The notes beneath the pieces are model-generated. The model was not told the origin of the DNA and searched no databases. It saw nothing but the letters and a program-made list of their open reading frames with translations. The translations under genes and the position numbers were made by a program. A stretch of 64,000 nt of DNA, from positions 3,844,001-3,908,000 of the forward strand of contig OX337231.1 in NCBI GenBank assembly GCA_946965045.2, given 5' to 3'. Shown one piece after another: positions 8,647 to 45,710 of this stretch. Within the stretch, counting starts at the first letter, position 1. Each line of letters opens with the position of its first letter. The DNA is from Epithemia pelagica (lineage: Eukaryota; Protista; Bacillariophyta).

Positions 8647-10230
8647 TTACTTGCCATGCGCATCCCATACAAATCCAATCTCCTCCAACATCAAAATGCG
8701 ATCAACTGTCAATGAACTCGATTCTTTGCCTTCTTGTCGCTGCTGGTACTCTTGCCGTTGCGTTTCCACCCACTGACTCAGCTCCTTGTTTACAGAGTCA
8801 TCTTGTAGGACATTGCAGTGCCCGTGCATTTCTTTGAACTTTTTCAGTTCCTCGTATCGTTTCATCCATGTGCTTCCCCGTGTCCGTGTATCCCAAGAAA
8901 ATCCAATCTTCTCCAACATATCAACGCGCCAATCTGTCATTCTTTTCGTTTCTTTGCCTGCTTGTCGAAGTCGGTATGCTTCACGTTGTTTATACACCCA
9001 AAGACCCAGCTTTTTGTTTGGAGGGTACTGTTTGGGGACATTGCAGTGTCCATTACTTTGTTGGAACTCTTTCAATTCCTCGTATCGTTCCATCCATCCA
9101 CTTTCCTGTGGTTTCCAGACAAATCCAATCTCCTCCAACAGGGCAATGCGCTCAGCAGTCATTGCGCTTGATTGTTTACCTTTTTCTTGAAGTCTGTATT
9201 CAGTGCGTTGTTTATGCACCCACGTGCCTAATTCCTTATTAGCAGAGTCGTCTGAGGGGACGTTGCAGTGCCCGCGAGTTGCTTTGAACTGTTTCAGTTC
9301 CTCGTATCGTACCATCCACGTACTGTCCGGTACGTTCCAAACAAACCCAATCTTTTCCAACAAATTGATACGGTCGTCTGCCATAGGACTGACCTTTCCT
9401 TCTTTCCTTTTGCGGTAATCTCGTCTCTGTCTATCCACCCAATGCCCAAGCGAAGGGTTCTCCATGTACCGTTGTGGTACCATGCAATGGCCATTTTTCT
9501 TCTGAAACTGTACCAATTCTTGGTATCGAGTATTCCAAACAGTTTCTTTTGCGGAGTTTTTGGTAGTAGTTTCTGCGTCTTTGTATCCAAACAAATGAGC
9601 TTGTGAGCCTTACTGTTCCCATGCTGCATTCTGACAAGAACCCCTGCACAAAAGAGAAACACTTACTTGTTTCAGAAATCTCAGTGAGTGGGTCCCCGCC
9701 ATGCGAGTTTGCGGCATGTTCGGACTTCTTAGTTGTAGTTTCTACAAACAAATGAGATAAGCCTTGCTATTCTCATGCTGTATTTGTACAAGAACCACTG
9801 AATCAAAGAGAAACACTTACTTGTTTCAGAAGTCTCAGTGAGATGGTCCCCGTCATGTGAGTTTACGGCACTTTCAGACATCGTAGTTGTAGTTTCTAGG
9901 TCTTTTTATACGAACAAATGAGATAGTGAGCCTTGGTATTCCCATGTTGTATTCGGACAAGAACCACTGCATCAAAGAGAAACACTTACTTGTTTTAGAA
10001 GTCTCGTCAGTGAGTTCGTCCCCGTCACGTGACTTTGCGGCAAATTGGCGGATTAGTCTCCAGTTGTGCTTCGTGGTCAATAACTTTGAAAAGAGGCCAA
10101 TCCGTGGTGTTGTGCCATGATTGCCTTGTGGGGACAAATGAACAACGGAACGTTGAACAATAGGCTGATAAAGTGACGTTTTAGCCAGCGTTCGAATGGC
10201 TAACCATCGTGCTTGTCGATGAAATAGCAT
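8647..10230 (-). CDS. HA-repeat protein HA1 (4 helicase-associated domains) with predicted mitochondrial presequence, 438 aa, 4 exons
   Basis: Exons 10230-9990, 9895-9821, 9741-9667 and 9572-8647; GTAAGT donors, YAG acceptors, 1317 nt in frame. Repeats W..RY.EL..F...GHC.VP.....LG.WV..QR..Y...R...L..IGF.W (Pfam HA pattern). No D/E in the first 68 residues. Confidence 0.88.
9555..10045 (-). repeat. Three tandem exon+intron units (periods 169 and 154 bp) in HA1
   Basis: Donor GTAAGT begins (minus strand) at 9989, 9820 and 9666; the units are clearly homologous. Confidence 0.9.
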
Positions 10231-10659
10231 AATGTTGTTTTCTTTGAACTGGTGATCGAAGCTTGTCTTGTCTTCTGTATGTGTACAAAGAGCATTTATG
10301 AGCTTTGGTTTCCCCGTGGTTGTAACACTGTGGCCGAGGGATGCTCGTCGATATCAATCCAGCTTTGAGCTTACATGAAAACTTGGTGGTCGATATCTAT
10401 CAAGAAAACTTGGTTCAGTCCACTTCAGTCACGACATGTGGATCCCGCGCGAGCATCGCGTAAACGAAACGACCGGTAAGCACCTTTGCTCGAAGAAGTC
10501 GTGGGCTAGCATAAGGCATTCGTCACTGTCATTTCTTGCTTTTCCTCTCCATCATCATATTTCGTGCTGCTCTGTCACACTTTACTGGTGCATACTGTCA
10601 TTCCTACTCCTTTTCTGGATCATCATGTTCCGTGTTCCTCTGTCACACTCTTGCGAAGC

Positions 10660-11525
10660 ATATGAATTGTTTTGTTTGTCGAGACCTTCTCCAAGTTCCA
10701 CCAACGGACCAGAATCTCTTGACGGAACTGGGGTTGTTCGGCCATGAACCCAAGAATCTGCGTGCTAGATCAAAGTCTTCTTCTTTTTCCTGTCGTCGAA
10801 TCAAGACGGCCGCCTGATTGGGATCTTCCAGTGGATCCTTTTAGGTGCGTGATTGTTGGTTTCGTCGGTTTTGGACAAGGTCGGCGATTCGACCAACTAG
10901 AGTGCTGGGTGGTTGCAGGACGATCGTTTTTTGGCTCATAGCAAGTGATCGAGGTATACCGGGTCAGATTTTGAACGAGAATGGGACCGGCACGTACGGC
11001 ATAGACACAAGCCTTGGGAGGCCACGGCCGAGTAGTACCAGAAACAACAGCTGCTGCTGAGGTTTCGTCAAGATTGTTGCTGTTGTTGTTCGGTAGGACG
11101 CAATCTCCGGCGGCATAGACAAAGAGACACAAAATGAATTGTTTGGTGAAATGAACGGCAACCCATCCTTCAGAAGTATCGTTCAGCCATGGATCGTTGA
11201 GATGGTCGTTGTTTTGCAATAGTACGAAGACATGAGGGTGTAATCCATCCAACCTCCATCGAGATGCCGGAGTCATATGGCCAATTCAACACCGGCCACA
11301 CCGCGGCTCCCACACCAATTATCCGTAGTGGTTTCTTGTCGAATGATTGCTTGTTGTCGGGCGTCTTGCAAGCGTTGGATAAGGGCCGTAATGGGTAGAG
11401 TGGGAATGGTATACTCTTGTGGTCCTGGAATGACATGCCAGTCACGACTAGCACTGCCCACATCGAGCGACAGGACATCAAACGGAATGGTTTGTGAAGT
11501 GCTGGTAGAATTGGAATTTGCCACA
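10660..11525 (-). pseudogene. Fragmented FAD oxidoreductase copy (OR-A)
   Basis: Pieces PFDVLSLDVGSAS..., WPPKACVYAVRAGPILVQNL and ENDPLEDP... lie in different frames with large deletions relative to 28296-30203. Confidence 0.85.
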
Positions 11526-11994
11526 ACGGAATGGGGAAAAGGCCGTCACCGGCAAAGGTGCACAATCCAACGCGTCAACAAAGACGTTGAAGTATCAGTG
11601 ATTCTGTCTGCTGGGATCTTGTTTGATTCCATCATCAATTCATTGGATATTGTGTTGAAAGGTCGAAATACGCAGCGTTTTTCCAAACTGAACCATTCTT
11701 CTTCTTCCCTCGTGTTGTGTTTGTGTTGCAACTGTCATTCTTTAGAGTATAATAGTCCTCTTCGTTTCTTTCCTCGCTTTCTTGTTTGGTTGCCCCTTCG
11801 TTTTCAATAAGAAGAGAACCTTGACCCGGAGCGCTGGTTTGGCGAAGAGAAAACGAGAGACGGAAGTGGTCGACTTGCGATGAGTGGGCGAGTATGCGTG
11901 CTGGTAGAGCCCGGCGACCAACCCAACAGCGAGTCGCACACTAAACGAAAACGACAGACAGTGAAGATGGAATCCACCTTGGGGAATCTCAGTT

Positions 11995-12201
11995 GTGCTG
12001 TGTCTGCTTGAAACAAAGGTTACTCTTGACTGGGACTTTCTAGAGTACGATGGAGGCCATTTGACAGAATTTGCTGGTTACAATTGCCGTGACTACTCCA
12101 ACACCGTCCCAAACCCGTCCAGCGCCATGCGGAATCACCGCAAATGCGGTCTTTGTGTGCGTACGACGCCATTCCAAAACGATACAATCAATGAAATATA
12201 A
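11995..12201 (+). pseudogene. Disrupted copy of the BED-finger-like ORF at 25603-25983
   Basis: Near-identical to 25690-25900 but with CRDC changed to CRDY and a premature TAA (CAA in the other copy). Confidence 0.4.
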
Positions 12202-12633
12202 TCCGCATTATGCTTTGATGCAACTTCTGACCGATCGAGACAGTGTGACAATGCCAGAGCCAAGCAACAGACTGGTCTGTGTCAGTGACAAATACTTTTC
12301 CTTCCATCGTCAAATGATCGTATGCAACGCTATGCATCGCCAAGTGTACATCGGTAATGGTGTCGCGATATAGTCCTAGGACCCATTGTTTTTATCATCA
12401 AAGATACAACCAGTAACGCTACAGCAATAACTCATGCTCACATATTTCATTCTATAGTAATAACTCTTCAAACAAACTTGACGAAAAAGACAGTCATTCA
12501 GTCAATGAGCTCCATACTAGAGTCTCGTAAAAGCACAGAAGAAAAGCATCCACATCATTTTTCATTCAATGAGTTCATGATCTCGCTGCGATCAGGCATC
12601 ATCTGTCAGATCCTCTACACAACCGCATCCTTT

Positions 12634-14230
12634 TCAAACGTTTGCATCCCAAACAAATCCAATCTCCGCCAACATTGAAATACGCTCATCTGTCATTTGA
12701 CTCGATTCGTTGCCTTCTTGTCGAAGTCTGTATTCTGTACGTTGCGTTTCCACCCACTGACTCAGCTCTCTGTTTACAGAGTCATCTTCTGGGACATTGC
12801 AGTCTCCGTGAACTTCTTTAAACAGTTTCAGTTCCTCGTATCGTTTCATCCATGTGTTATCCCGTGTTCGCGTCTCCCAATTGAACCCAATCTTCTCTAA
12901 CATTTCAACACGCCAATCTGTCATTGTTTTCGATTCTATGCCTGCTTGTCGAAGTCGGTATGCTTCACGTTGTCTTCGCACCCACCGACCCAACTTTGGG
13001 CTTGGAGTGTAGTCCTGAGGGACATTGCAGTGCCCGTGACTTTGTTGGTACTCTTCCAGTTCCTCGTATCGCGCCATCCATGCGCTTTCCTGTAAATTCC
13101 AGACAAATCCAATCTCCTCCAACAAGGTAACCCGCTCACTTGTCATTTGACTCGACTGTTTACCTTCTTGTTGAAGTCGGTAGTCAGTGCGTTGTTTATG
13201 CACCCACGTACCGAGCTCCTTATTGTTGACAGAGTAGTCTCGAGGGACATTGCAATGTCCGTTAGTTGCTTTGAACTGTTTCAGTTCCTCGTATCGTGTC
13301 CTCCATGCGCTTTCCAATGGATTCCAGACAAATCCAATCTTTTCCAACAAGACTACTCGGTTGCCTGCCATTGGACTGCCAGTGCCTTCCTTCCCTCTGC
13401 GGTAGAGTTGTCTCTGTTTACCCACCCAATGCCCAAGCGAAGGGTTCTCCTTGTACCGATGTGGTACCATGCAATGACCATGTTTTTCCTGAAACTGGAC
13501 CAATTCTTGGTATTGAGCTTTCCACAAAATGTCATATTGGGACTTTTTGGTTGTAGTTTCTGCGTCTTTGCATACAAACAAATGATAAAGTGAGGCTTAC
13601 TATTTCCATGCTGCATTCTGACAAGAACCCCTGCGCAAAAGAGAAACACTTACTTGGTTCAGAAGTCTCAGTGAGATGGTCCCCGTCATGTGAGTTTGCG
13701 GCACTTTCAGACTTCTTAGTTGTAGTTTCTGCGTCTTTGTAAACAAACAAATGATATTGTGAGCCTTGCTATTCCCATACAGCATTCGAACAGGAACTAC
13801 TTTATCAAAGAGAAAGACTTACTTGTTTCAGAAGTTTCGGTGAGATGGTCCCCGTCATGTAAGTTTGCGGCACTTTCAGACTTCTTAGTTGTAGTTTCTA
13901 CGTCTTTGTATACGAACCAATGAGCTAGTGAGCTTTGCTATTCCCATGCTGCATTCTGAGAAGGACCACTGCATCAAAGAAAAAAGACTTACTTGTTTCA
14001 GAATTCGTAGTGAGTCCTTCCCCGTCCTGTGACTTTGCGGCAAAGTGGCGGATGGGTGTCCAGTTGTTCTTCGTGGTCAACAACTTTGAAAAGAGGTCAA
14101 TCCGTGGTGTTGTGTCATGATTGCCTTGCGGAAGCAAACGAACAATGGAACTTCGATCAAGTCGGCGAGACGCTGACGTTTTAGCCAGCGTTCGAGTGGC
14201 CAACCAACGTGCTTGTCGATGAAATAGCAT
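12634..14230 (-). CDS. HA-repeat protein HA2 (4 HA domains) with predicted mitochondrial presequence, 437 aa, 4 exons
   Basis: Exons 14230-13993, 13897-13823, 13728-13654 and 13559-12634; introns of 95, 94 and 94 nt with GTAAGT..YAG; 1314 nt in frame. Presequence begins MLFHRQARWLATRTLAKTS. Confidence 0.88.
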
Positions 14231-14596
14231 ACTGTTGTTTTCTACGAACTTGTGTTCAAAGCTAGTCTTGTCTCTTATGTACCAAGAGAAATTATGAGCC
14301 GTCGTTGTGAAACTGTGGCCGGAGTATGCTCGGTCGATATGAATCAAGTTTTTGTGTGGTTTACATGAAAACTTGGGCACAGTCCGAATCAGTCCATTTC
14401 AGTCACGAGTTGTGGATCCCGCGCGAGCATCGCATCGAAGTTACCATAGGAATACCAAACTTCTGCTCGAAGAAGCCGTGCTATATAGCTCGAAAGCATC
14501 AGGCATTGGTCCGGAGGAGGAAAGAAAGCACTGTATCACTCTCATTCCTCTGCATTGTCATGTTTCGTGTTCCTCTGCCTCATTCTCTTGGTGCCC

Positions 14597-16424
14597 TTAG
14601 ATTGTTTCGTTTGCCGAGGCCCTCTCAAACTTCCACCAACCTCTTGACGGAATTGGGGTTGGTCGGCCATGACGCGCAAGACGCTCCATGCTTGCACAAA
14701 GTCGACATTGTCATCTTGTCGTCGAATCAAGACGGCCGCTTGACAGGGATCTTCCAGTGGATCGTTTTCAAAGCGTGGTTGTTGCTGTTGTCGGTTTTGG
14801 AGATAGGCGGTGACATCGTCCTGAGCGTCGTTTTGTTGGGTTTGGTGCTCCACGGAAGAAATGGACGACGACGACGACGAGTCGATTGCATTACAGGTGG
14901 TATCTTGATGTTTGTCAGGCGTCATTTGAAACAAGCGCATAAAGTTGGAATCGATCCGATCCTTCATGGCAAACACCCATGCTCCATACACATAAATCCC
15001 AAAGAGAAGACCCAAAGCCTTTCCCGGTGGCCGCGCGTCGCAGACCAAGAGTCGGAGAAAGTCGGTTTGGGGCTGATATTCGACCAACTCGATTGATGCT
15101 TGTTTCGATGGATTCGTCAATAGCAAGTAATTGAGGTACCGGGTCAGATTTTGCACGAGAATCGGACCGGCCCGTACGGCATAGACACCAGCCTTGGGAG
15201 GCCATGCCCTACCAGTGTCTACTGAGGACTTGTCGTCGTCGTTGTCCTTGTTCTGGTGCTTGTTGTTGTTTGGTTGGACCATGGTGGCACAATCACCGGC
15301 GGCAAAGACAAAGGGATGCGAAGTGGATTGCAAAGTCTGATGAACGGCAATCCATCCTTCGGGAGTAACCTTCAGCCATGAGTGGTTGTCGGTGTTTGTC
15401 GTGAAAGGACCTTGTGGTGGTTGATTTGGAAACGACATGCAATTGGCGCGAACCAATTCTTGCGGACCGGCACCGGTTGCCCAAATACAATGGTCAAAGG
15501 GCAATTCTAATGGAGTGGGTGGTTCTGGTTCTGGTTCTTCATTCGTATTGTTCGCAGTGCCTGGTTCGTGATGTTGGTGTTGTTGGAGAAGGAGTTTGTT
15601 CGATAAAACTTGTGTGACGCGACAATTGGGTTGGACTGTGATATTGTTGTGGGCAAAGAGCTCGTGTAGCTTGGCTCGTACAATGGTGCTTTCGTGAGGC
15701 CACAGCGTTGGAGATGACGACACAAGAGTGACGTGTGGATGTAAACCATCCAAACTCCATCGAGATGCCAGAGCCAAGGCCAATTCAACACCGGCCACAC
15801 CGGCTCCCACTACAATGATCCGTAGTGGTTTCTGGTCGAAGGATTGTTGCTGTTGTTGTTTTTGTTTTTGTATAAGAGCTTGTTGTCGGGCGTCTTGCAA
15901 TCGTTGGACCAAGGCTGCAATGGGTCGAGTGGGAATGGTATACTCTTGCGCTCCTGGAATGACATGCCAGTCGCGACTGGCACTGCCGACATCGAGCGAC
16001 AGGACATCAAACGGAATGGTTGTTTGTGACGTCGTAAGAGTCTTGTCCTGGACATTGACCTGAGTGACAGTTTCGGGTACAAACTGAATGTTGGCCAGAT
16101 CAATTTGTGTCGTTGCAACGTTGGGATACAAATTCGCAATGGCACCGGGTACCATCCCCGAATAGGAAGCCTACGATTGACCATCAATCTAGGTAACCTT
16201 GAATTCATCTTGTGGTCGATGTTTCATGGCTTGAATCACTTGCAAATGAGCAGGACCACCGCCGAAAAAGACCAACTGCAAGGGTTTGTTGGTCGTCGTC
16301 GTCGTCGTCGTCGTCGTCATTCTCCTCGAGGGTAGGATTTCCAGCATCTGTAACTGGACGTCGGTCTTCGTTCGGTCCGAATCGTGCATCGGTTAGTACG
16401 ACAAAGGGTCCTCCTCCTATACAT
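14597..16424 (-). pseudogene. Full-length but inactivated FAD oxidoreductase copy (OR-B)
   Basis: Two in-frame TAGs near 16170-16190 (KVT*IDGQS*ASYSGMVP against KVTLIDGQSQASYSGMVP in OR-D). Also a frameshift in the presequence, a ~10-nt deletion near 14640, and GGGHAH changed to GGGPAH. Confidence 0.88.
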
Positions 16425-19680: not shown

Positions 19681-21517
19681 TTATTGGTGCCTACCAGTTG
19701 TTTCGTTTGCCGAGGCTCTCTCCAACTTCCACCACTGGTCCAAAACCTCTTGACGGAATTGGGGTTGGTCGGCCATGATGCGCAAGACGCTCCATGCTTG
19801 CACAAAGTCGACACTGTCATCTTGTCGTCGAATCAAGACGGCTGCTTGATAGGGATCTTCCAGTGGATCGTTTTCGGGGCGTGGTTGTTGCTTTCGTCGG
19901 TTTTCGATATAGTCGGTGACATCGTCCTGGGCGTCGTATTGTTGGGTTTGGTACGGTACGGAAGAACTGGAGGACGACGAAGAAGAGTCGGTTGCATTAG
20001 AAGTTGGGTCTTGGTGTTTGTCCTGCGTCATTTGAAACAAGCGCATAAAGTTGGAATCGATCCGATCCTTCATGGCAAAGACCCATGCTCCATACACATA
20101 AATCCCAAAGCGAAGGCCCAAAGCCTTGCCGGGTGGCCGCGCGTCGCAGACCAAGAGTCGGAGAAAGTCGGTTTGGGGTTGATATTCGACCAGCACGAGT
20201 GATGCTTGGTTTGATGGAGTCGCTAACAACAAGTCATTGAGGTACCGGGTCGGATTTTGCACGAGAATGGGACCGGCACGTACGGCATAGACACCAGCCT
20301 TGGGAGGCCATGCCTTGGTAGTTAAAACTGGAGACTTGTCGTCTTTGTGGTTGTTGTTTCGTTGGACCATGGTGGCACAATCTCCGGCGGCAAAGACAAA
20401 AGGATGCGAAGTGGATTGCAACGTGGGATGAACGGCAATCCATCCTTCGGGAGTAACCTCTAGCCATGAGTGGTTGTCGGTGTTTGTCGTAGAAGGACCT
20501 TGTGCTTGTTCATTTGAAGACGACAGGCAATTGGTGCGAACCAAGTCTTGGGGACCGGCACCGGTTGCCCAAATACAATGGTCAAAAGGCAATTCCAGTG
20601 GAGTGGGTGGTTCTGGTTCCGGTCCTTCATTTGTATTCTTCACATTGCCTGGTTCGTTTTGTGGCTGTTGTTGGAGAAGGAGTTTGTCCGGTAAGACTTG
20701 TGTGACACGACAATGAGGTTGGAGTGTGATATTGTTGTGGGCAGAGAGCTCGTGTAGCTTGGCTTTTACAATGGTGCTTTCGTGAGGCCACACGGTTGGA
20801 GACGACGATACGAGAGTGACGTGTGGATTTAAACCATCCAAACTCCATCGAGAAGCCAGAGCCAAGGCCAATTCAACACCAGCCACACCGGCTCCCACCA
20901 CAATAATCCGTAGGGGTTTCTTTGATTGCTGTTGTTGGTTGCGTATTAGAGCTTGTTGTCGGGCGTCTTGCAATCGTTGGACCAAGGCCGCAATGGGTCG
21001 AGTGGGAATGGTATACTCTTGCGCTCCTGGAATGACATGCCAGTCACGACTGGCACTGCCCACATCGAGCGACAGGACATCAAACGGAAAGGTTGTTTGA
21101 GACGTCGTAAGAGTCTTGTCCTGCACATTTACCCGAGTAACAGTTTCGGGTACAAAGTGAATGTTGGATGCTTTCGACAAGGCTGCCAAATCAATTTGTG
21201 TCGCAATGGCACCTGGTACCATACCTGAATACGAAGCTTGTGATTGACCGTCCACCAACGTAAGCTTGACTTGTTCTTGTGATCGATGTTTCATGGCTTG
21301 AATCACTTGCAAATGAGCAGGACCACCGCCGACAAAGACCAACTGCAAGGGTTTGTTGGTCACCGCCGAACAAGACCAAGTGCGACGGTTTGTGGGTCGT
21401 CGTCGAAGTCATGCTCCTCCTCCAGGCCAGAATGCGCCAGCACCCGAGACTGGTCCTCGCTCTCCGTTCGGTGCCATTCGCGTATCTGGTAATACTACAA
21501 AGGGCCCTCCTATACAT
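19681..21517 (-). pseudogene. Chimeric FAD oxidoreductase copy (OR-C) with a frameshift at the first GxGxxG motif
   Basis: The ATG at 21517 gives MYRRALCS...MTSTTTHKPSHLVLFGG, and a 37-bp duplication then shifts the frame. The downstream 560 codons (19681-21363) are open but begin with GTG. Confidence 0.8.
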
Positions 21518-22288: not shown

Positions 22289-23828
22289 CTATTTGTTCGT
22301 TTCATAGTTGTTTTTCTCAAGATAGTTCCTTACCCACTCCAATACTTCTCGATCATCCTCGTCAAAGAGTCCAATATCGTACAACATCTTGAGACGTTCT
22401 ATTGTAAGCGACCAAGGTGTATTTCCAAGCATCCACCAAAATAGCTGATTTCTCTGGTTTCTCATCCAACTCATCAGTGGAGATGGATCGTGTTTGTTCA
22501 TTAAAGGAAATCTTCCGCGTCTTTGTTTGTATTCCACCAGTTGTTGATATCGCTGCATCCAGGCATCATCCATTGCATCCCAAACAAATCCAATCTCCTC
22601 CAGCATAGAAAAGCGCTCATTCGTCATTGCACTCGACTGTTTGTCTTTTTGTCGAAGTCGGTAGTATTTACGTTGGTTATTTACCCATATACCCAGTCCC
22701 TTATTGGCAGAGTAGGTTTGAGGGACATTGCAGTGCCCGTGAGTTGCTTTGAACTGTATAAGTTCGTCGTATCGAGTCATCCAAGCACTTTCCAGTGCAT
22801 TCCATACAAATCCAATCTTTTCCAACATACCAATGCGCTCAGTAGTCATTGCGCTTGATTCTTTGCTTCCTTGTCGAAGTCGGTAGTCTCTGCGTTGGTT
22901 ATTTACCCATATAGCCAGCCCCTTATTGGCAGAGTAGTCTTGAGGGACATTGCAGTGCCCGTGAGTTGCTTTGAACTGTATTAGTTCGTCGTATCGAGTC
23001 ATCCAAGCACTTTCCAGTGCATTCCATACAAATCCAATCTTTTCCAACATACCAATGCGCTCAGTAGTCATTGCGCTTGATTCTTTGCTTCCTTGTCGAA
23101 GTCGGTAGTCTCTGCGTTGGTTATTTACCCATATAGCCAGCCCCTTATTGGCAGAGTAGTCTTGAGGGACATTGCAGTGCCCGTGAGTTGCTTTGAACTG
23201 TATTAGTTCGTCGTATCGAGTCATCCATGCGTTTCCCTGTGCATTCCATACAAATCCAATCTTTTCCAACAAGACTACACGGTTGCCTGCCATTGGACTG
23301 CCAGTGCCTTCCTTCCCTCTGCGGAAGAGTTGTCTCTGTGTATCCACCCAATTCCCCAAGGGAGGATTCTCCTCGTACCGTTTGGGCACCATGCAATGAC
23401 CATGTTTTTTCTGAAACTCAATTAATTCTTGGTATCGAGTCTTCCAAAGAGTTTCTTTTTCGGAGTCTTTGGTAGTAGTTTCTGTGTCGTTGTATCCGAA
23501 CAAATGAGCCAGTGAGCATTTTTTGGTTTCTTGCTGTATTTCTACAAGAAAAGCTCTTTCGCGCATCAAAAATTGACTTACTTGAACTTGATTTTTCATT
23601 CAGTCGCTCCAAATCAATTGCCTTGGCGACAAATTGGCGGGTTGGTGTCCAGTTGTGCTTCGTGGTCAACAACTTTGTAAGAAGATCATTCACGGGTCTT
23701 TCATGGTTTCTTTGCGGTACCAAGCAAGTATAGTAGCGTTGAATAACAGGGCCGCAGAAAGGTCGTTTTGCCATGTTTCGAAGAGGCAACCGACGGACCT
23801 GTGGGAGAAGGGACAGGAATCTCGCCAT
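22289..23828 (-). CDS. HA-repeat protein HA3 (5 HA domains) with predicted mitochondrial presequence, 479 aa, 2 exons
   Basis: Exons 23828-23582 and 23481-22289; 100-nt GTAAGT..CAG intron; 1440 nt in frame. Internal repeats have a 222-bp (74-aa) period and repeats 2 and 3 are almost identical. N-terminus MARFLSLLPQVRRLPLR. Confidence 0.88.
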
Positions 23829-26332: not shown

Positions 26333-27929
26333 TCAAACGTTTGCATCCCAAACAAATCCAATCTCCTCCAACATTGAAATACGCTCATCTGTCATTTGAC
26401 TCGATTCGTTGCCTTCTTGTCGAAGTCTGTATTCTGTACGTTGCGTTTCCACCCACTGACTCAGCTCTCTGTTTACAGAGTCATCTTCTGGGACATTGCA
26501 GTCTCCGTGAACTTCTTTAAACAGTTTCAGTTCCTCGTATCGTTTCATCCATGTGTTATCCCGTGTCCGCGTCTCCCAAGAAAATCCAATCTTCTCCAAC
26601 ATTTCAACACGCCAATCTGTCATTGTTTTCGATTCTATGCCTGCTTGTCGAAGTCGGTATGCTTCACGTTGTCTTCGCACCCACCGACCCAACTTTGGGC
26701 TTGGAGTGTAGTCCTGAGGGACATTGCAGTGCCCGTGACTTTGTTGGTACTCTTCCAATTCCTCGTATCGCGCCATCCATGCGCTTTCCTGTAAATTCCA
26801 GACAAATCCAATCTCCTCCAACAAGGTAACCCGCTCACTTGTCATTTGACTCGACTGTTTACCTTCTTGTTGAAGTCGGTAGTCAGTGCGTTGTTTATGC
26901 ACCCACGTACCGAGCTCTTTATTGTTGACAGAGTAGTCTCGAGGGACATTGCAATGTCCGTTAGTTGCTTTGAACTGTTTCAGTTCCTCGTATCGTGTCC
27001 TCCATGCGCTTTCCAATGGATTCCAGACAAATCCAATCTTTTCCAACAAGACTACTCGGTTGCCTGCCATTGGACTGCCAGTGCCTTCCTTCCCTCTGCG
27101 GTAGAGTTGTCTCTGTTTACCCACCCAATGCCCAAGCGAAGGGTTCTCCTTGCACCGATGTGGTACCATGCAATGACCATGTTTTTCCTGAAACTGGACC
27201 AATTCTTGGTATTGAGCTTTCCACAAAATGTCATATTGGGACTTTTTGGTTGTAGTTTCTGCGTCTTTGCATACAAACAAATGATATAGTGAGGCTTACT
27301 ATTCCCATGCTGCATTCTGACAAGAACCCCTGCGCAAAAGAGAAACACTTACTTGGTTCAGAATTCTCAGTGAGATGGTCCCCGTCATGTGAGTTTGCGG
27401 CACTTTCAGACTTCTTAGTTGTAGTTTCTGCGTCTTTGTAAACAAACAAATGATATTGTTAGCCTTGCTATTCCCATACAGCATTCGAACAGGAACTACT
27501 TTATCAAAGAGAAACACTTACTTGTTTCAGAAGTCTCCGTGAGATGGTCCCCGTCATGTAAGTTTGCGGCACTTTCCGACTTCCTTGTTGTAGTTTCTAC
27601 GTCTTTGTAAACGAACCAATGAGCTAGTGAGCTTTGCTATTCCCATGCTGCATTCTGAGAAGGACCACTGCATCAAAGAAAAAAGACTTACTTGTTTCAG
27701 AATTCGTAGTGAGTCCTTCCCCGTCCTGTGACTTTGCGGCAAAGTGGCGGACGGGTGTCCAGTTGTTCTTCGTGGTCAACAACTTTGAAAAGAGGTCAAT
27801 CCGTGGTGTTGTGTCATGATTGCCTTGCGGAAGCAAACGAACAATGGAACTTCGATCAAGTCGGCGAGACGCTGACGTTTTAGCCAGCGTTCGAGTGGCC
27901 AACCAACGTGCTTGTCGATGAAATAGCAT
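26333..27929 (-). CDS. HA-repeat protein HA4 (near-identical to HA2), 437 aa, 4 exons
   Basis: Exons 27929-27692, 27596-27522, 27427-27353 and 27258-26333; the last exon differs from HA2 by Y>C, N>S and A>E. Confidence 0.88.
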
Positions 27930-28295: not shown

Positions 28296-30203
28296 TTAGA
28301 TTGTTTCGTTTGCCGAGGCCCTCTCAAACTTCCACCAATGATCCAGGACCTCTTGACGGAATTGGGGTTGGTCGGCCATGATGCGCAAGACGCTCCATGC
28401 TTGCACAAAGTCGACATTGTCATCTTGTCGTCGAATCAAGACGGCCGCTTGATAGGGATCTTCCAGTGGATCGTTTTCAGAGCGTGGTTGTTGCTTTCGC
28501 CGGTTTTCGAGATAGTCGGTGACATCGTCCTGAGCATCGTACTGTTGGGTTTGGTACGGTACGGAAGAACTGGAGGACGACGAGGACGACGACGACGACG
28601 AGTCGGTTGCATTAGAAGTTGGGTCTTGGTGTTTGACCTGCGTCATTTGAAACAAGCGCATAAAGTTGGAATCGATCCGATCCTTCATGGCAAACACCCA
28701 GGCTCCATACACATAGATACCAAATCGAAGACCCAAGGCCTTGCCGGGTGGCCGCGAGTCGCAGACCAAGAGTCGGAAAAAGTCGGTTTGGGGTTGATAT
28801 TCGACCAACTCGAGTTGTTGTTGGTGGGAGGAGGATTGATTCTTGGAGAAGACTCGCAAGCGATCGAGGTAACGGGTCAGATTTTGCACGAGAATCGGAC
28901 CGGCCCTTACGGCATAGACACCAGCCTTGGGAGGCCATGCCTTGGTAGTTAAAACTGGAGACTTGTCGTCTTTGTCGTTGTTATTGTAGTTGTTGTTGTT
29001 TGGTGGGACCATGGTGGCACAATCACCGGCGGCAAAGACAAAGGGATGCGAAATTGACTGCAAGGTGGGATGAACGGCAATCCATCCTTCGGAAGTAACC
29101 TTCAGCCATGAGTGGTTGTCGGTGTTTGTCGTAGAAGGACCTTGTGGTGGTTGATTTGGAGACGACAGGCAATTGGTGCGAATTAATTCTTGGGGCCCGG
29201 CACCGGTTGCCCAAATGCAATGGTCAAAGGGCAATTCTAGTGAACTAGGTGGTTCTGGTTCTGGTTCTCCATTCTTAGTCTTCACATTGCCTGGTTCGTT
29301 TTGTTGCTGTTGCTGGAGAATGAGTTTGTCCGGCAACACTTGTTTGACACGACAATAGGGTTGGAGTGTGATATTGTTGTGGGCAAACAGCTCACGTAGC
29401 TTGGCTTGTACAATGGTGCTTTCGTGAGGCCACAGCGTTGGAGACGACGATACGAGAGTGACATGAGGATACAATCCATCCAAACTCCATCGAGATGCCA
29501 GAGCCAAGGCCAATTCAACACCAGCCACACCGGCTCCCACCACAATAATCCGTAGCGGGTTCTTGTCGAACGGTAGTTTTTGTTGTTGTTTCTGTAACAG
29601 AGCTTGTTGTCGGGCGTGTTGCAAGCGTTGGACCAAGGCCGCAATGGGTCGAGTGGGAATGGTATACTTTTGCGCTCCCGGAATGACATGCCAGTCGCGA
29701 CTGGCACTGCCCACATCGAGCGACAGGACATCAAACGAAATGGTTGTTTGTGTAGTGTTGGAAGAATTGGAGTTTGTCCCACCTTCGTTGCCACTTGCGA
29801 ACGTCGTAAGAGTCTTGTCCTGGACATTGACTCGAGTAACAGTTTCGGGTACAAACTGAATGTTGGAATCCTTGGCCAAGGCTGCCAAATCAATTTGCGT
29901 GGTTTCCACGTTGGGATACAAATTCGCGATGGCACCGGGTACCATGCCTGAATACGAAGCTTGTGATTGACCATCAATTAAGGTAACCTTGACTTGATCT
30001 TGTGGTCGATGTTTCATGGCTTGAATCACTTGCAAATGAGCATGACCGCCGCCCACCAAGACCAAGTGCAAGGGTTTGTGAGTCGTCGTTGAAGTCATGC
30101 TCCTCCTCCAGGGTTGAATTCGCCAGCACCCGAGACTGGTCGTCGCTCTCCGTTCGGTCCGAATCGTGCATCGGTTAGTACTACAAAGGGCCCTCCTATG
30201 CAT
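28296..30203 (-). CDS. FAD-dependent pyridine nucleotide-disulfide oxidoreductase (N-terminal-to-SelD / TIGR03169-like) with predicted mitochondrial presequence (OR-D, the intact copy)
   Basis: 635-aa ORF from ATG with motifs LVLVGGGHAH, SYSGMVPG, FDVLSLDVGS, VVGAGVAGVELA, WATGA, FAAGDCA and PKAGVYAVRAGP. Arg-rich 35-aa N-terminal extension; no SelD domain follows. Confidence 0.9.
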   Translation of the reverse strand: MHRRALCSTNRCTIRTERRATTSLGCWRIQPWRRSMTSTTTHKPLHLVLVGGGHAHLQVIQAMKHRPQDQVKVTLIDGQSQASYSGMVPGAIANLYPNVETTQIDLAALAKDSNIQFVPETVTRVNVQDKTLTTFASGNEGGTNSNSSNTTQTTISFDVLSLDVGSASRDWHVIPGAQKYTIPTRPIAALVQRLQHARQQALLQKQQQKLPFDKNPLRIIVVGAGVAGVELALALASRWSLDGLYPHVTLVSSSPTLWPHESTIVQAKLRELFAHNNITLQPYCRVKQVLPDKLILQQQQQNEPGNVKTKNGEPEPEPPSSLELPFDHCIWATGAGPQELIRTNCLSSPNQPPQGPSTTNTDNHSWLKVTSEGWIAVHPTLQSISHPFVFAAGDCATMVPPNNNNYNNNDKDDKSPVLTTKAWPPKAGVYAVRAGPILVQNLTRYLDRLRVFSKNQSSSHQQQLELVEYQPQTDFFRLLVCDSRPPGKALGLRFGIYVYGAWVFAMKDRIDSNFMRLFQMTQVKHQDPTSNATDSSSSSSSSSSSSSVPYQTQQYDAQDDVTDYLENRRKQQPRSENDPLEDPYQAAVLIRRQDDNVDFVQAWSVLRIMADQPQFRQEVLDHWWKFERASANETI

Positions 30204-39865: not shown

Positions 39866-40035
39866 CCACAACGCGTGACTGAAATGGACGGATTCGGATT
39901 GACCAAAAGTTTTCATGTGAACCACACAGCCTCGGACGCAGCTTCAACGGCCAACTTGATGATCAAAGAAAGGCACTCGTGTTCTTTCCTCCACAGGTCC
40001 GTTGGTTGCCTCTTCGAACCATGGCAAACAGACAC
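39866..40035 (+). pseudogene. 5' stub of an HA gene (promoter element plus start of exon 1), closer in sequence to HA3 than to HA5
   Basis: CCACAGGTCCGTTGGTTGCCTCTTCGAACCATGGCAAA matches HA3 exon 1 and is preceded by the conserved HA upstream element. Confidence 0.7.
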
Positions 40036-40140
40036 CAACGAAATCTCACCTTAACTGTGGCTACTACCTATTACTAGAGCGGACCCATGCGGGAGAGCAC
40101 TCACGAACAAACAAAGGACTATTGTTTCTTCTGTTGTCTA

Positions 40141-40296: not shown

Positions 40297-40303
40297 AGCA
40301 CCT

Positions 40304-40361
40304 CCACAACGCGTGACTGAAATGGACGGATTCGGACTGACGAAGTTTTCATGTGAACCAC
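40304..40361 (+). promoter_or_regulatory. Conserved ~58-bp element found upstream of every HA gene
   Basis: CCACAAC(T/G)CGTGACTGAAATGGAC.GATTCGGAC...AAGTTTTCATGT.AACCAC also occurs at ~10404-10440, 14363-14420, 23881-23940 and 28062-28119 (minus strand) and at 39866-39924 and 44389-44440 (plus strand). Its function is inferred from position only. Confidence 0.6.
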
Positions 40362-40407
40362 AGATGATCCACCAACTCGATGATCCAAGAAAGGCACGGC
40401 GAGTGTC

Positions 40408-41950
40408 ATGTTCTTTTCTCCACAGGTCCGTGGACTTTCTCTTGGAGCTATGGCAAAAAGGCCTGTATGTCATCCAGTTGTTCGCCGGGGCTTTGCTTGC
40501 TTGGTACACCAGCAAAAAGGCCATGGTAGAACCCTCAGAGATCTTCTCTCAAAAATTTGGGTAATGAAGCACAACTGGCCACCAATCCGCCTATTTACCG
40601 CAAAGGCAATTGATGTGGAGGGAGTGAATGCAAAAACTAGTTCAAGTAAGATAATTTTCGATGCGTAAGAGCTTGTCTTGTCCAAAACCAGCAGGACAAC
40701 AACGACAAAGCTCACAAGTTCGTTTGTTTCGATACAACGACGCAGAAACTACAACCAAAAAGTCACAAAATGAGATTCTTTGGGAGACGCGATATCAAGA
40801 ACTGATTGATTTTTGCACAGAGCATGGTCATTGCAGGGTACCAATACGGTACAAGGATAACCTTTCGCTTGGGTGTTGGGTGGGTAGACAGAGACAAGAT
40901 TACCGCAAAAGGAAAGAAGGAAAGGTCAGTCCTATGGCAGACGACCGTATCAATTTGTTGGAAAAGATTGGATTTGTCTGGAATGCACTGGAAAGTACGT
41001 GGATGGCACGATACAACGAACTGAAACAGTTCCAAGAAAGTCATGGACACTGCAATGTCCCTCGAGACTACTCTGCCAATAAGGAGCTGGGTCTATGGGT
41101 GAGTAATCAACGTACACAATACCGACTTCGACAAGAAGGTAATCAATCAAGTACAATGACAAATGAGCGCATTTCTATGTTGGAGGAGATTGGATTTATT
41201 TGGGATGCACAGAAAAGTGCGTGGATGACGCGATACGAGGAATTGATAGAGTTCAAACAACGTCACGGACACTGTAATGTCCCTAGCGATTACTCTGCCA
41301 ATAAGGAGCTGGGTCAGTGGGTGCATACACAACGTAAACAATACCGACTTCTACAAGAAGGCAAACAATCGAGTCAAATGACAAATGAGCGCATTTCTAT
41401 GTTGGAGGAGATTGGATTTATTTGGGATGCACAGGAAAGTGCGTGGATGACGCGATACGAGGAATTGATAGGGTTCAAACAACGTCACGGACACTGCAAT
41501 GTCCCTAGCGATTACTCTGCCAATAAGGGGCTGGGTCAGTGGGTGCATACACAACGTACACAATACCGACTTCAACAAGAAAGTAATCAATCAAGCTCAA
41601 TGACCAATGAGCGCATTTCTATGCTGGAGGAGATTGGATTTGTATGGGACGCATTGGAGGATGCCTGGATGCAGCGATATCAAGAACTGGTAGAATACAA
41701 GAGAAGACGAGGACGATTTCCAAGAATTAAAAAACTCGATCCATCTGCACTGATGAGTTGGATGTTCAACCAGAGAAATCAGCTATTTTGGTGGATGCAA
41801 GGAAATACACCTTGGTCGCTTACAATAGAACGTCTCAAGATGTTGTACGATATTGGATTCTTTGACGAAGACGATCGAGAAGTCTTGGAGTGGGTAAGGA
41901 ACTATCTTGAAAAAAACAACGATGAAATGAACAAAAAGGACGATGGATAA
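40408..41950 (+). CDS. HA-repeat protein HA5 (5 HA domains) with predicted mitochondrial presequence, 480 aa, 2 exons
   Basis: Exons 40408-40645 and 40746-41950; 100-nt GTAAGA..CAG intron; 1443 nt in frame; 222-bp repeat period. Confidence 0.88.
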
Positions 41951-43670: not shown

Positions 43671-43689
43671 TAGTCTTGCAGAAGACGTT

Positions 43690-44215
43690 GGTGACGACCG
43701 GTGTCTATACCGTGCGTGCCGGTTCCATTCTCGTTCAAAATCTGGCCCGTTATAATTTGCTGTTATTCGACAAGAATCGATCCTCCAACCACGCAAAATT
43801 AATGGAGTTGGTCAAATATCAGCCCCAAACGGTTTTTTTAAAACTATTGTTGGTTGGCGAGGATCATCCACCGGACAATCCCTTTGGCGTTCGAGTTGGA
43901 GTTGGTGTCCATGTGAATGGAGCGTGGGCGTTCGCCATGATGGATCGGAATCATTCCAACTTCATGCTTTTGTTTCAAATGGTCCATGCAATCTTGCGTT
44001 TACTTTCCAAACCAACCATGCGACGCTCATGATGTGATGTAACCGAGTATCTACGACAAGGGCAGCAACAACCACGCCACGAAAACGATCCACTGGAACA
44101 TCCTTATCAGGCGGCTGTCTTGATTTGACGAAAGGGCGATTTTGGCGTGGAGCGTCTTGCGGATCGTGGCCGAACAACCCACGTTCCACCGACAGTTTCT
44201 CAAACGAAACACTTT
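43690..44215 (+). pseudogene. C-terminal FAD oxidoreductase remnant (OR-F)
   Basis: GVYTVRAGSILVQNLARY..YQPQTVFLKLLL..GAWAFAMMDR..SNFMLLFQM, followed by frameshifted ENDPLEHPYQAAVLI. Confidence 0.85.
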
Positions 44216-44538
44216 TGATAGTTACCAATAGAGTGTGGCCAACAAAACATTACGATCCTGAAGAAGAAGGAATAACAGAAATGCGGTCCTTCTCGCAGTC
44301 AAGGCCAGATGGAGCACAGACGGAGGCAACGGCTTTTTCGTATTCTATGTTCGCTTCACACTCCACACCGAGCCATCATGCTCGCAAATCGTGACAGAAA
44401 TGGACTGATTCGGACGTTGACCAAGTTTTCATGTATAACCAAAAACGTGATGGATACCATGGGCCGCAATCGGGTAATCCAAAGCTAAAATATGATCTTG
44501 GGGCACGATTTGATAACCAGTTCGGAGCAAAAAACACG

Positions 44539-45710
44539 ATGATTTTTCATGGACAAACAAAAGTTGGGTGGCCATTCGAATGCTGGCCATAACCCCAGTG
44601 AATCGGCTTCTTGTTCGACGATCCTTTGCTCATTTGCGGTCACAAGGCAATCTTGGCACACCACCACTGTTTGGCCTCTTTTCAACGTTATTGACCATGA
44701 AGCACAACTGGACACCAACCCGCCAATTTGCAGCAAAGGTACATGACGGGGACGGGGACGGACCCAGTGAGAATTCTGGAACACGTAAGTTTTGATCCAG
44801 TGGTTCTTGTCAGAAAGCAGAATGGGAAAGCCCAGGCTCACTAGCTCATTTAGTCGAAAACATTGATGAAGAAACTACTTCCACAAAGTCCAAAAATGAG
44901 ATTCTTTGGAATACTCGATACCAAGAATTGATTGACTTTCAGAAAAGGCATGGTCATTGCAGGGTACCAAAAGGGTACAAGGAGAACCCGCCTTTGGCGA
45001 ATTGGGTGGATAAACAGAGACAAGTTTACCGCAGAGGGAAGGAAGGCACTGGCAGTCCAATGGCAGGCAACCGAGTGGTCTTATTGGAAAAGATTGGGTT
45101 TGTTTGGAACCCACAGGAAAGTGTATGGATGGCACGATACGAGCAACTGAAACAGTTCCAACAAAGTCATGGACACTGCAATGTCCCTCGAGACTACTCT
45201 GCCAATAAGAAGCTGGGCTTCTGGGGAATGACGCAACGTACTCAATACCGACTTCGGCAAGAAGGTAAACAAGCAAGTCACATGACAAATGAGCGCGTCG
45301 CTATGCTAGAGGAGATTGGATTTAATTGGAATGTACAGAGAAGTGCATGGATGATTCGATACGAGGACCTGATAGAGTTTAAGCAAAGTCACGGAAATTG
45401 CAACGTCCCTCAGAACTACTCTGCCAATAAGGCGCTAGGCCGGTGGGTGCATTCGCAACGTAAACAATACCGACTTCTACAAGAAGGTGACCAATCAAGT
45501 CCCATGACAAATGATCGCTTTACCCTGATGGAGAAGATTGCATCTGTATTCTGGTGGATGCTTGGGTATACACCACCTCGGTCGCTCACAAATGAACGTC
45601 TCAAGATGCTGTACGACATTGGACTCTTTGACGATGATCCAGAACTCTTGGAGTGGGTAAGGAAGTATCTTCAAAAGAACAACTATGACACGAACAAAAG
45701 GGACGATTGA
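44539..45710 (+). pseudogene. HA6: frameshifted exon 1, one intron (44785-44871), three HA domains plus a partly deleted last domain
   Basis: ATG ATT TTT CAT GGA CAA is homologous to MLFHRQ, but 2 extra nt lead to an early TAA. About 40 aa are missing before FWWMLG. Confidence 0.8.

What the first reader, a model, noticed from the sequence alone, without database searches (positions are those of the whole stretch)
8647..45710. Rapidly evolving cluster of mitochondria-targeted HA-repeat proteins, a possible diatom analogue of plant RFL/PPR clusters
Seen: six paralogues plus a 5' stub within 37 kb, five of them with intact spliced reading frames. Splicing adds ~80-aa Arg/Leu/Ser-rich N-termini that the ORF track misses (HA1 has no D/E in its first 68 aa and ends R.F|AAK-like). 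Each is followed by 4 or 5 tandem ~74-aa HA repeats, and there is no helicase domain. Established: Pfam HA is a helical domain usually attached to helicases and thought to bind nucleic acid. In plants, tandem clusters of mitochondria-targeted helical-repeat (Restorer-of-fertility-like PPR) genes diversify by unequal crossover to recognise organellar RNAs. Inference: these may be modular organellar nucleic-acid binders under similar turnover. This is the best candidate here for an undescribed system.
Basis: partly seen in the sequence, partly recalled or inferred. Interest (0 to 1): 0.85.

Follow-up and report, generated by a model that had tools for sequence, protein, structure and literature searches.

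The report
Diatom HA-repeat gene cluster with mitochondrial-type leaders
A pennate diatom carries a tandem cluster of six genes whose proteins are just 3-5 "helicase-associated" (HA) three-helix repeats behind a spliced-on leader that looks like a mitochondrial import signal; the cluster is demonstrably reshuffled by unequal crossover and gene conversion, but where the proteins go and what they bind remain untested.

Summary
Window 8647-45710 contains six paralogous genes (A-F) and a 5' stub. Each has 3-5 Pfam HA repeats (E 1e-55 to 1e-99) and no helicase domain. Each also has a separate first exon of 79-82 codons that is basic, almost acid-free and ends at a conserved R-x-F|(A/V/T)-A-K site. 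Contigs of one public run that behaves like RNA show gene B's three GT..AG introns; three DNA runs do not. A second assembly of the same locus (flanks 96-97.5% identical) differs in gene number, HA-repeat number (5 vs 6) and linker micro-exon number (2 vs 6). It also carries a D/C chimeric gene whose breakpoint lies inside exon 1. A ~90-bp tract of A is 97-100% identical to E. Structural turnover is therefore shown. dN/dS is 0.3-0.5 overall. Six repeat positions evolve at roughly the neutral rate, and none is significant for positive selection. The single repeat matches only the solved HA domain 2KTA, whose paper title reports DNA binding. Mitochondrial import, RNA versus DNA binding and any restorer-like role are all inferred. 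The RFL/PPR analogy is partly supported. I found no paper on these diatom proteins. Other notes in this scan cover parts of the same stretch.

The parts
8647..10230 (-). HA-A gene: exons 10230-9990, 9901-9821, 9741-9667, 9578-8647; 442 aa; leader + 2 linker micro-exons + 4 HA repeats
   Evidence: first acidic residue at 69. Low depth in the RNA-like run X4.
12634..14230 (-). HA-B gene: exons 14230-13993, 13903-13823, 13734-13654, 13565-12634; 443 aa; 4 HA repeats
   Evidence: All three introns (89, 88, 88 nt, GT..AG) are seen as joints in run X4 only; frame intact.
22289..23828 (-). HA-C gene: exons 23828-23582, 23481-22289; 479 aa; 5 HA repeats (repeats 2-4 are near-identical recent internal duplicates) + C-terminal tail
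   Evidence: (22556-23049 vs 22778-23271, 92.9%)
26333..27929 (-). HA-D gene: near-copy of B (6 aa and 17 nt differences in 1332 nt); absent from the second assembly
39875..40050 (+). 5' stub: duplicate of the E/C-type upstream motif plus about 20 first codons, then unrelated sequence
40408..41950 (+). HA-E gene: exons 40408-40645, 40746-41950; 480 aa; 5 HA repeats + tail
   Evidence: AF2 model of exon 2 has pLDDT 94.8, pTM 0.78
44540..45710 (+). HA-F gene, compromised: ancestral ATG 44540 is frameshifted; readable from ATG 44580; exons 44580-44784, 44872-45710; 347 aa; 3 repeats fused to the tail
   Evidence: an intact F-type exon 1 exists elsewhere (P0123); the F' copy in the other assembly has a premature stop instead
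14382..14406 (-). Conserved upstream/5'-UTR motif GTGACTGAAATGGACNGATTCGGAC. Further copies at 23905-23929(-), 28081-28105(-), 39875-39899(+), 40313-40337(+), 44391-44415(+); a diverged copy lies upstream of A.
   Evidence: 6 matches against 0 expected; alignment A1; an X4 contig reaches 14397, so at least part is transcribed
11624..16028 (.). Segmental duplication unit (HA gene + Pyr_redox_2 gene), 92.6% identical to 25327-29752
   Evidence: Pfam of the neighbours
28296..30203 (-). Co-duplicated pyridine nucleotide-disulphide oxidoreductase gene (other copies 14542-16155 and 19681-21363; fragment 10770-11276); this copy has an R-rich leader

Best explanation
This is a species-restricted sub-family of the large diatom family of HA-repeat-only proteins.

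Shown:
- There are six tandem genes.
- Each repeat is a three-helix HA domain.
- Gene B is spliced and transcribed.
- A leader exon is retained on every intact copy in two assemblies.
- The cluster is rebuilt by non-allelic crossover, intragenic repeat duplication and short gene-conversion tracts.

Inferred:
- The 50-66-residue leader is a mitochondrial matrix presequence. It is an R/L/S/T-rich amphipathic start followed by an F/L-x-x-L-L type element and then an R-x-F|A-A-K processing site.
- After cleavage the mature protein would be an acidic Ser/Thr-rich linker plus a rigid array of 4-5 HA domains.
- Each domain presents helix 2 (L-G-x-W-V-x-x-Q-R-x-x-Y) with invariant scaffold residues and variable x positions.
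- The array binds an extended stretch of mitochondrial nucleic acid. DNA is somewhat more likely than RNA, given the only published hint.
- Different paralogues and alleles have different specificities.
For: - HA repeats and no other domain.
- A single-repeat model (pLDDT 95.5) matches the solved HA domain 2KTA at Z 7.0, rmsd 2.1 A, 63 residues aligned, 36% identity. Everything else scores Z <= 4.7. The profile-to-2KTA E-value is 5.1e-10.
- The five-repeat array model has pLDDT 94.8 and pTM 0.78.
- GT..AG joints of B appear only in the RNA-like run.
- Leader statistics and the conserved RxF|(A/V/T)AK site. All 13 exon-1 copies in the two assemblies align, with the block L-(F/L)-(S/T)-K-L-L-T-T-K-H-N-W-x-x-x-R-x-F-x-A-K the best conserved part.
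- Purifying constraint on the arrays: dN/dS 0.3-0.5 and 0.41 by tree-based counting.
- Invariant scaffold with variable positions 14, 22, 33, 36, 53 and 60.
- Turnover. The second assembly lacks D and has a C' whose first ~150 nt are 93-97% identical to B/D and whose remainder is 97-100% identical to C. It also has 6 rather than 5 repeats in C', 6 rather than 2 linker units in B', and extra paralogues P8' and E2'. A is 97-100% identical to E over nt 121-210 of the r1-r2 alignment but only 73-77% to B.
- The title of Mills et al. 2013 (PMID 23160728) states that the HA domain structure 'indicates domain binding to DNA' (reference list read).
- Other diatom HA-only proteins include some with mitochondrial-type leaders and some with signal-peptide + F-motif leaders. 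The family therefore seems to be deployed to organelles more than once.
Against: - No trained predictor (TargetP, HECTAR, MitoFates) or localisation data were available. My leader statistics are crude.
- The leader has no relative outside this cluster among 1.84 billion representative proteins, so conservation across species cannot back it.
- Most diatom HA-only relatives have acidic or K/R-patch N-termini that look nuclear or cytosolic.
- The arrays are close to electrically neutral (net -2 to +12), not strongly basic.
- Nucleic-acid binding of these proteins is untested, and I could not read the one paper on the domain.
- No fold relative other than 2KTA was found, so structure gives no independent clue to the ligand.
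- RNA evidence covers only gene B (or D), and comes from contigs of a run whose type is not on record.
Confidence: 0.5

Rival explanations
1. These are nuclear (or cytosolic) DNA-binding HA-repeat proteins, like most of the diatom family. The basic leader is not an import signal. It could be a disordered, nucleolar-type or regulatory N-terminal region, and the conserved K-H-N-W..R-x-F-A-A-K block could be a functional motif of the mature protein.
For: Most HA-only relatives in other diatoms lack organelle-type leaders, and many carry NLS-like K/R patches. Repeat 1 of A and E contains R-K-R-K-E-G-K. The block around the putative cleavage site is the best conserved part of exon 1, which is unusual for a simple targeting peptide. 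The HA domain is reported to bind DNA.
Against: The first 24-68 residues of the leaders contain no acidic residue (0-3 D/E in the whole 50-66-residue leader) against 6-12 basic ones. They start M-L-F-H-R-Q-A-R-W-L-type, and an acidic segment begins immediately after the R-x-F|A-A-K site. That is the classical presequence/mature boundary pattern. The leader sits on its own exon and is kept on all 12 intact copies despite dN/dS of 0.35-0.8.
Confidence: 0.25
2. The proteins are imported into mitochondria, but the HA array is a protein-protein scaffold or has some other non-nucleic-acid role.
For: The arrays are near neutral in charge. The rigid helical repeat array (pTM 0.78) would also suit protein binding. 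No structural relative with a nucleic-acid complex was found.
Against: The domain occurs in bacteria fused to helicases, nucleases and TniQ targeting proteins. The one structural paper infers DNA binding. Q38-R39 and the aromatic residues of helix 2 are invariant, as expected of a nucleic-acid contact surface.
Confidence: 0.12
3. This is a young, largely neutral tandem amplification with no distinct function per copy. The variation reflects only relaxed constraint and recombination in a duplication-prone region.
For: F is decaying in two different ways in the two assemblies. B and D are near-identical. There is no significant positive selection. The neighbouring oxidoreductase is co-amplified and partly truncated. 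A copia element sits in the cluster in the other assembly.
Against: dN/dS of 0.3-0.5 with an invariant scaffold shows constraint. Eleven to twelve copies across the two assemblies keep open spliced frames. B is expressed at contig depth 100-270. The upstream motif is conserved 24-25 of 25 nt across paralogues whose coding exon 1 is only about 50-60% identical at the nucleotide level.
Confidence: 0.13

Closest known systems
Pfam HA (PF03457) helicase-associated domain; solved example 2KTA (Bacteroides vulgatus BVU_0683 residues 627-691)
   Same: Same domain by sequence (Pfam E down to 1e-98; profile to 2KTA 5.1e-10) and by fold (Z 7.0, rmsd 2.1 A): three helices of about 20, 18 and 9 residues.
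   Different: Here there are 3-5 tandem copies with no helicase, nuclease or TniQ partner. The proteins are eukaryotic and nuclear-encoded, have a spliced N-terminal leader, and carry a diatom-typical H-G-H-C-N-V-P loop that 2KTA lacks.
Diatom 'helicase-associated domain-containing proteins' (uncharacterised; e.g. UniRef entries from Proboscia, Pseudictyota, Cyclostephanos, Chaetoceros)
   Same: Same HA-only repeat architecture, 31-54% identity, 713 hits with E <= 1e-5 in the length window searched.
   Different: The leader exon of this cluster has no counterpart in them. Those checked are single genes, not clusters. Their N-termini are very varied.
Plant Restorer-of-fertility-like (RFL) P-class PPR clusters
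   Same: Nuclear tandem clusters of helical-repeat proteins with mitochondrial-type leaders. Copy-number and chimeric-gene variation arises by unequal crossover. Variable residues sit at fixed repeat positions on a conserved scaffold (RFL properties as in PMC7380019 and PMC5075784, which I found by title and abstract only).
   Different: The fold is different (three-helix HA domain of 74 aa, not a 35-aa helix-turn-helix solenoid; no PPR hit). No significant diversifying selection was found. The ligand is unknown and more likely DNA. There is no known target or organelle-nucleus conflict.
Chlamydomonas NCL cluster of OPR proteins (from my own knowledge: Boulouis et al. 2015, Plant Cell)
   Same: It is an algal example of a fast-diversifying tandem cluster of organelle-targeted helical-repeat proteins.
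   Different: It is OPR, not HA; chloroplast, not mitochondrion; and RNA binding is established for OPR proteins.

Membership tests
Pfam HA (PF03457) domain family | Significant match to the HA profile above the gathering score (28.4 bits) | tested here: met
   182.9-324.1 bits for the six ORFs, 3-5 stretches each
Pfam HA (PF03457) domain family | Three-helix fold of the solved HA domain (2KTA) | tested here: met
   Single-repeat AF2 model against 2KTA: Z 7.0, rmsd 2.1 A, 63 of 74 residues, 36% identity, and the only match above Z 5. The array model gives Z 7.3.
Pfam HA (PF03457) domain family | Association with a helicase in the same protein (the origin of the name, not a requirement of the profile) | tested here: not met
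   No helicase domain in any of the six proteins or their leader exons
Mitochondrial matrix-targeted proteins (cleavable presequence) | N-terminal 20-70 residues rich in R/K, S/T, L and A, nearly free of D/E, with no signal-peptide hydrophobic core | tested here: met
   6-12 K/R and 0-3 D/E in 50-66 residues; the maximum 10-residue Kyte-Doolittle mean is 0.6-1.8. This is my own crude statistic, not a trained predictor.
Mitochondrial matrix-targeted proteins (cleavable presequence) | MPP-type cleavage motif (R-2 or R-3: R-x-(F/Y/L)|(A/S)) | tested here: met
   R-x-F|(A/V/T)-A-(K/N) in all 13 exon-1 copies of the two assemblies. The motif definition is from my own knowledge.
Mitochondrial matrix-targeted proteins (cleavable presequence) | Demonstrated import or localisation | not testable with these tools
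   No localisation or proteome data. The supplement of the T. pseudonana organelle proteome paper is not held.
RFL-type clusters (functional analogy, not homology) | PPR motifs | tested here: not met
   No PPR hit in Pfam. The best Foldseek hit to a designed PPR has E 0.39 and TM 0.11.
RFL-type clusters (functional analogy, not homology) | Tandem cluster with presence/absence, chimeric and repeat-number variation between haplotypes or accessions | tested here: met
   Window compared with ENA ERZ21939226 ctg1324l
RFL-type clusters (functional analogy, not homology) | Diversifying selection (dN/dS > 1) at ligand-contacting repeat positions | tested here: inconclusive
   Positions 14, 22, 33, 36, 53 and 60 reach 1.1-1.9 times the mean dS, but binomial p is 0.2-0.7 in a tree-based count. 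Overall dN/dS is 0.41.
RFL-type clusters (functional analogy, not homology) | Sequence-specific binding to mitochondrial transcripts | not testable with these tools
   No binding data and no mitochondrial genome of this species in hand

The most novel reading that the evidence does not exclude
HA-repeat arrays are a diatom-lineage class of modular, sequence-reading organellar nucleic-acid-binding proteins. They would be functional counterparts of PPR/OPR/mTERF proteins, with one three-helix HA domain per recognised unit and specificity set by the variable positions of helix 2. This cluster would be their fast-recombining mitochondrial branch, tracking changes in the mitochondrial genome or its transcripts.
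Probability: 0.25. Interest if true: 0.85.

Novelty: new variant of a known kind. Interest (0 to 1): 0.6.

Why it matters
Outside green plants and algae, PPR and OPR proteins are few. A 2026 survey says that other players in organelle gene expression remain to be discovered and names diatoms as unexplored (PMC13126933). Diatoms hold hundreds of uncharacterised HA-repeat-only proteins, and I found no paper on them.

This cluster offers a compact test case:
- a leader exon that can be fused to GFP;
- short, confidently modelled arrays of 4-5 domains that can be expressed for binding assays;
- natural chimeras and repeat-number variants between two assemblies.

If the proteins do enter mitochondria and read nucleic acid, that would add a new repeat scaffold to the small set of modular readers (TALE, PPR, PUF). 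If they do not, the cluster is still a clear eukaryotic example of gene birth by unequal crossover within an exon.

Tried and rejected
- RNA runs. No run on record as RNA holds the stretch. One of four runs (X4) nevertheless behaved as RNA and gave the B introns. The single read-laying run meant A, C, E and F could not be checked.
- Literature. Five searches for the HA domain in diatoms or PF03457 found only bacterial contexts or the unrelated HA2 domain. Mills et al. 2013 is not held. The T. pseudonana organelle proteome has no held supplement.
- Fold searches. Foldseek against the PDB gave nothing for the array (best E 0.12) or the single repeat (best E 3.6). So an HTH, winged-helix or solenoid (PPR/TPR) relationship is not supported.
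- The weak Pfam co-hits HTH_24, Arm-DNA-bind_3, HicA and L7Ae matched no stretch that passed on its own; all but HTH_24 (25.5 vs 21.9 bits) are also below the cut-off. I disregarded all of them.
- Leader homology. Both the word-index search and the exhaustive HMMER search found only this cluster's own copies. P0124 is a spurious low-complexity repeat hit.
- Plastid targeting is rejected. Diatom plastid import needs a signal peptide, and none is present.
- Positive selection. Pairwise and tree-based counts gave no significant site. No codeml or HyPhy was available.
- X4 joints 14397>10424 and 10459>10791 upstream of B are non-canonical and also occur in a DNA run. I treat them as assembly or paralogue artefacts and did not interpret them.

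Full report
**What is there.** The window is nuclear DNA of a pennate diatom (scan notes). Between 8647 and 45710 lie six ORFs that match Pfam HA (PF03457) with E-values from 1.2e-54 to 1e-98. They contain 4, 4, 5, 4, 5 and 3 repeats of about 74 residues and carry no helicase domain. A peptide resembling the N-terminus of the first gene is encoded 250-400 bp upstream of every HA ORF. I call the genes A (8647-10230, -), B (12634-14230, -), C (22289-23828, -), D (26333-27929, -), E (40408-41950, +) and F (44540-45710, +). A seventh 5' end is a stub. It has the conserved upstream motif at 39875-39899 and about 20 codons like the start of E and C, and then it ends.

**Gene models and RNA support.** With GT..AG introns all six frames read open.
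- A, B and D have four exons: a leader exon of 79-80 codons, two micro-exons of 25-27 codons made by tandem copies of a 169-bp exon-intron unit, and the HA exon.
- C, E and F have two exons with one intron of 87-100 nt.
- No run on record as RNA holds the locus. Of four runs laid on 8600-14400, however, one (X4, 39 Mb of contigs, very uneven cover, almost nothing in the intergenic stretch 11.5-12.3 kb) shows joints 13565>13654, 13734>13823 and 13903>13993. All have CT..AC ends on the + strand, i.e. GT..AG on the gene's strand, at depth 156-269. The three DNA-like runs lack these joints.
- These are exactly B's three introns, so exon 1 is spliced through both micro-exons to the HA exon in B (or its near-twin D).
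- For the other genes the junctions rest on homologous splice sites. A is barely covered in X4.
- F is compromised. A 2-nt A-run insertion after codon 7 destroys the ancestral start, whereas an intact F-type exon 1, P0123, exists in the protein databases. An internal deletion also fuses repeat 3 to the C-terminal tail.

**The leader.**
- The first 50-66 residues hold 6-12 Lys/Arg and 0-3 Asp/Glu.
- There is no hydrophobic core that could act as a signal peptide. That excludes diatom plastid or ER routing.
- All 13 exon-1 copies in the two assemblies end in L-(F/L)-(S/T)-K-L-L-T-T-K-H-N-W-x-x-x-R-x-F|(A/V/T)-A-(K/N), and an acidic segment follows at once.
- From general knowledge, R-x-F|A is the R-3 form of the mitochondrial processing peptidase site, and F-S-K-L-L fits the hydrophobic-x-x-hydrophobic-hydrophobic receptor-binding pattern.
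- Pfam finds no domain in exon 1.
- The leader has no relative outside this cluster, either in the word-indexed collection or in an exhaustive HMMER pass over 1.84 billion representatives. It is therefore a lineage-specific acquisition.
- This is a good but unproven case for mitochondrial import. I had no trained predictor and no localisation data.

**The repeats.**
- An AlphaFold2 model of E's HA exon (400 residues, 63-sequence alignment) has pLDDT 94.8 and pTM 0.78. Each repeat forms three helices of about 20, 18 and 9 residues.
- A single repeat modelled alone has pLDDT 95.5. It matches only 2KTA, the NMR structure of a bacterial HA domain: Z 7.0, rmsd 2.1 A, 63 residues, 36% identity. Nothing else exceeds Z 4.7. 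The profile-to-2KTA E-value is 5.1e-10.
- Foldseek finds no PPR, TPR or HTH relationship.
- The only functional statement I could reach is the title of the 2KTA paper, Mills et al. 2013, PMID 23160728: 'indicates domain binding to DNA'. I read it in a reference list and the paper itself is not held.
- In bacteria the domain is fused to helicases, PLD nucleases and TniQ.

**Variation within repeats.**
- Across the repeats the scaffold is invariant: W1, Y5, L8, G16, C18, V20, L31, W34, Q38, R39, R58, I65.
- Positions 14, 22, 33, 36, 53 and 60 are the most variable. Positions 33, 36, 37, 40 and 41 are the x's of helix 2, L-G-x-W-V-x-x-Q-R-x-x-Y.
- Their nonsynonymous rate is 1.1-1.9 times the mean synonymous rate in pairwise counts, and 1.1-1.4 times in a tree-based count. 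None is individually significant, and the overall ratio is 0.41.
- Between paralogues dN/dS is 0.3-0.5 for the arrays, 0.35-0.8 for the leader and about 0.7-1.4 for the linker.
- The arrays are therefore under purifying selection with near-neutral surface positions. Positive selection is not shown.

**Turnover is shown directly.**
- Inside the window a 4.4-kb unit (an HA gene plus a Pyr_redox_2 oxidoreductase gene) is duplicated at 92.6% identity, giving B and D. The oxidoreductase is present three times plus a fragment. C's repeats 2-4 are recent internal duplicates.
- A second public assembly (ENA ERZ21939226 ctg1324l, loci L001-L004) is collinear with the window and 96-97.5% identical in the flanks. 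It is the other haplotype or a close strain.
- Its cluster differs in several ways:
  - It has no D.
  - Its C' has six repeats. The first ~150 nt of C' are 93-97% identical to B/D exon 1 but only 50-70% to C, and the remainder is 97-100% identical to C. This is the product expected of a crossover between D and C inside exon 1. The interval is about 3.9 kb shorter, as that predicts.
  - Its B' has six linker micro-exons instead of two.
  - On the right side it has E1', an extra intact paralogue (P8', 444 aa), a copia insertion, a TLD-gene fragment, E2' (479 aa) and F'.
- E is only 85-88% identical to either E1' or E2', although the flanks are about 97% identical.
- F' keeps the ancestral ATG but has a premature stop, so F is decaying in a different way on each haplotype.
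- Short gene-conversion tracts are evident. Over nt 121-210 of the repeat 1-2 alignment A is 97-100% identical to E, which lies 31 kb away on the other strand, but only 73-77% identical to its closest paralogue B. Over the same tract B is 95-98% identical to C and F.

**Family context.**
- The HA exon of B finds 713 proteins with E <= 1e-5 in the length range searched. Nearly all come from diatoms (Ditylum, Cylindrotheca, Leptocylindrus, Rhizosolenia, Proboscia, Attheya, Chaetoceros, Cyclotella, Epithemia and others) and all are unnamed or 'helicase-associated domain-containing protein'.
- Their N-termini vary widely. Of 65 with an extension of 35 or more residues, my crude rules class 8 as signal-peptide-like, several of them followed by an A-F motif as in diatom plastid proteins. 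Another 12 class as mitochondrial-type and 45 as other, many acidic or with K/R patches.
- Two that I looked up are single genes in other diatoms' contigs.
- HA-only arrays are thus a large, uncharacterised diatom family. Most members are probably nuclear or cytosolic, and leaders seem to have been added more than once.
- I found no paper on these proteins.

**Verdict.**
The cluster behaves like RFL-type clusters in genomic terms (tandem, chimeric, copy- and repeat-number variable, conserved scaffold with variable positions), and its leaders look mitochondrial.
- The fold is unrelated to PPR. Diversifying selection is not demonstrated. The ligand, if any, is more likely DNA on present knowledge. 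Import itself is untested.
- I rate the mitochondrial nucleic-acid-binder reading at about 0.5. The main rival is a nuclear DNA-binding role.
- A 2026 survey notes that organellar gene-expression factors outside the green lineage remain to be found and names diatoms as unexplored (PMC13126933). That is why this cluster is worth a bench test.

Noticed in passing
window 14382-14406(-), 23905-23929(-), 28081-28105(-), 39875-39899(+), 40313-40337(+), 44391-44415(+): A 25-nt motif GTGACTGAAATGGACNGATTCGGAC sits 100-180 nt upstream of each start codon, inside a conserved block of about 60 nt that continues to CCAAGTTTTCATGTRAACCAC. It is conserved 24-25 of 25 nt, although the coding exon 1 of the same paralogues has diverged to about 50-60% nucleotide identity. 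It contains an upstream ATG (ATG GAC TGA in B, D and F). An RNA-like contig reaches 14397, so it is probably in the 5' UTR. It could be a promoter, uORF or RNA element.
   Followed up: partly
window 9555-10000, 13541-14042, 27240-27741; L001 5145-5983: A 169-bp unit (end of an exon, an 88-nt intron, start of the next exon) is tandemly repeated. Each copy makes a spliced 75-81-nt micro-exon that encodes an acidic Ser/Thr-rich 25-27-residue linker unit. RNA-like contigs show both copies spliced in B. The other assembly's B' has six units instead of two.
   Followed up: partly
window 13560-13566, 9573-9579, 27259-27265 and the homologous sites: Each of these introns ends in two AG acceptors 6 nt apart (CAAAG|ACGCAG|), both in frame. 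The RNA-like contigs use the upstream one in B. Alternative use would add or remove two residues.
   Followed up: no
window 14542-16155, 19681-21363, 28296-30203 (all -), fragment 10770-11276: A pyridine nucleotide-disulphide oxidoreductase gene (Pfam Pyr_redox_2, E 1e-21 to 1e-24) is co-amplified with the HA genes. Only the 28296-30203 copy has a complete N-terminus in one ORF, and that N-terminus is R-rich and presequence-like. The second assembly has two copies, one of them split.
   Followed up: partly
L003 12747-17879 (ENA ERZ21939226 ctg1324l 648219-653351): A full-length Ty1/copia-type element (1710-aa polyprotein ORF with RVT_2) sits inside the HA cluster in the second assembly, next to a duplicated fragment of the TLD-domain gene. 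It is absent from the window.
   Followed up: no
all HA repeats, e.g. window 41204-41425(+): The loop between helices 1 and 2 reads H-G-H-C-N-V-P in nearly every diatom repeat, with Cys invariant here. The bacterial 2KTA domain has no His or Cys there. A metal or redox role of this loop is conceivable but untested.
   Followed up: no
window 10424-10791 and 14397: Contigs of run X4 and of one DNA run join 14397 to 10424. X4 also joins 10459 to 10791 with non-canonical ends. These may be an unassembled structural variant upstream of a B-like copy, or a de Bruijn-graph artefact between paralogues.
   Followed up: no
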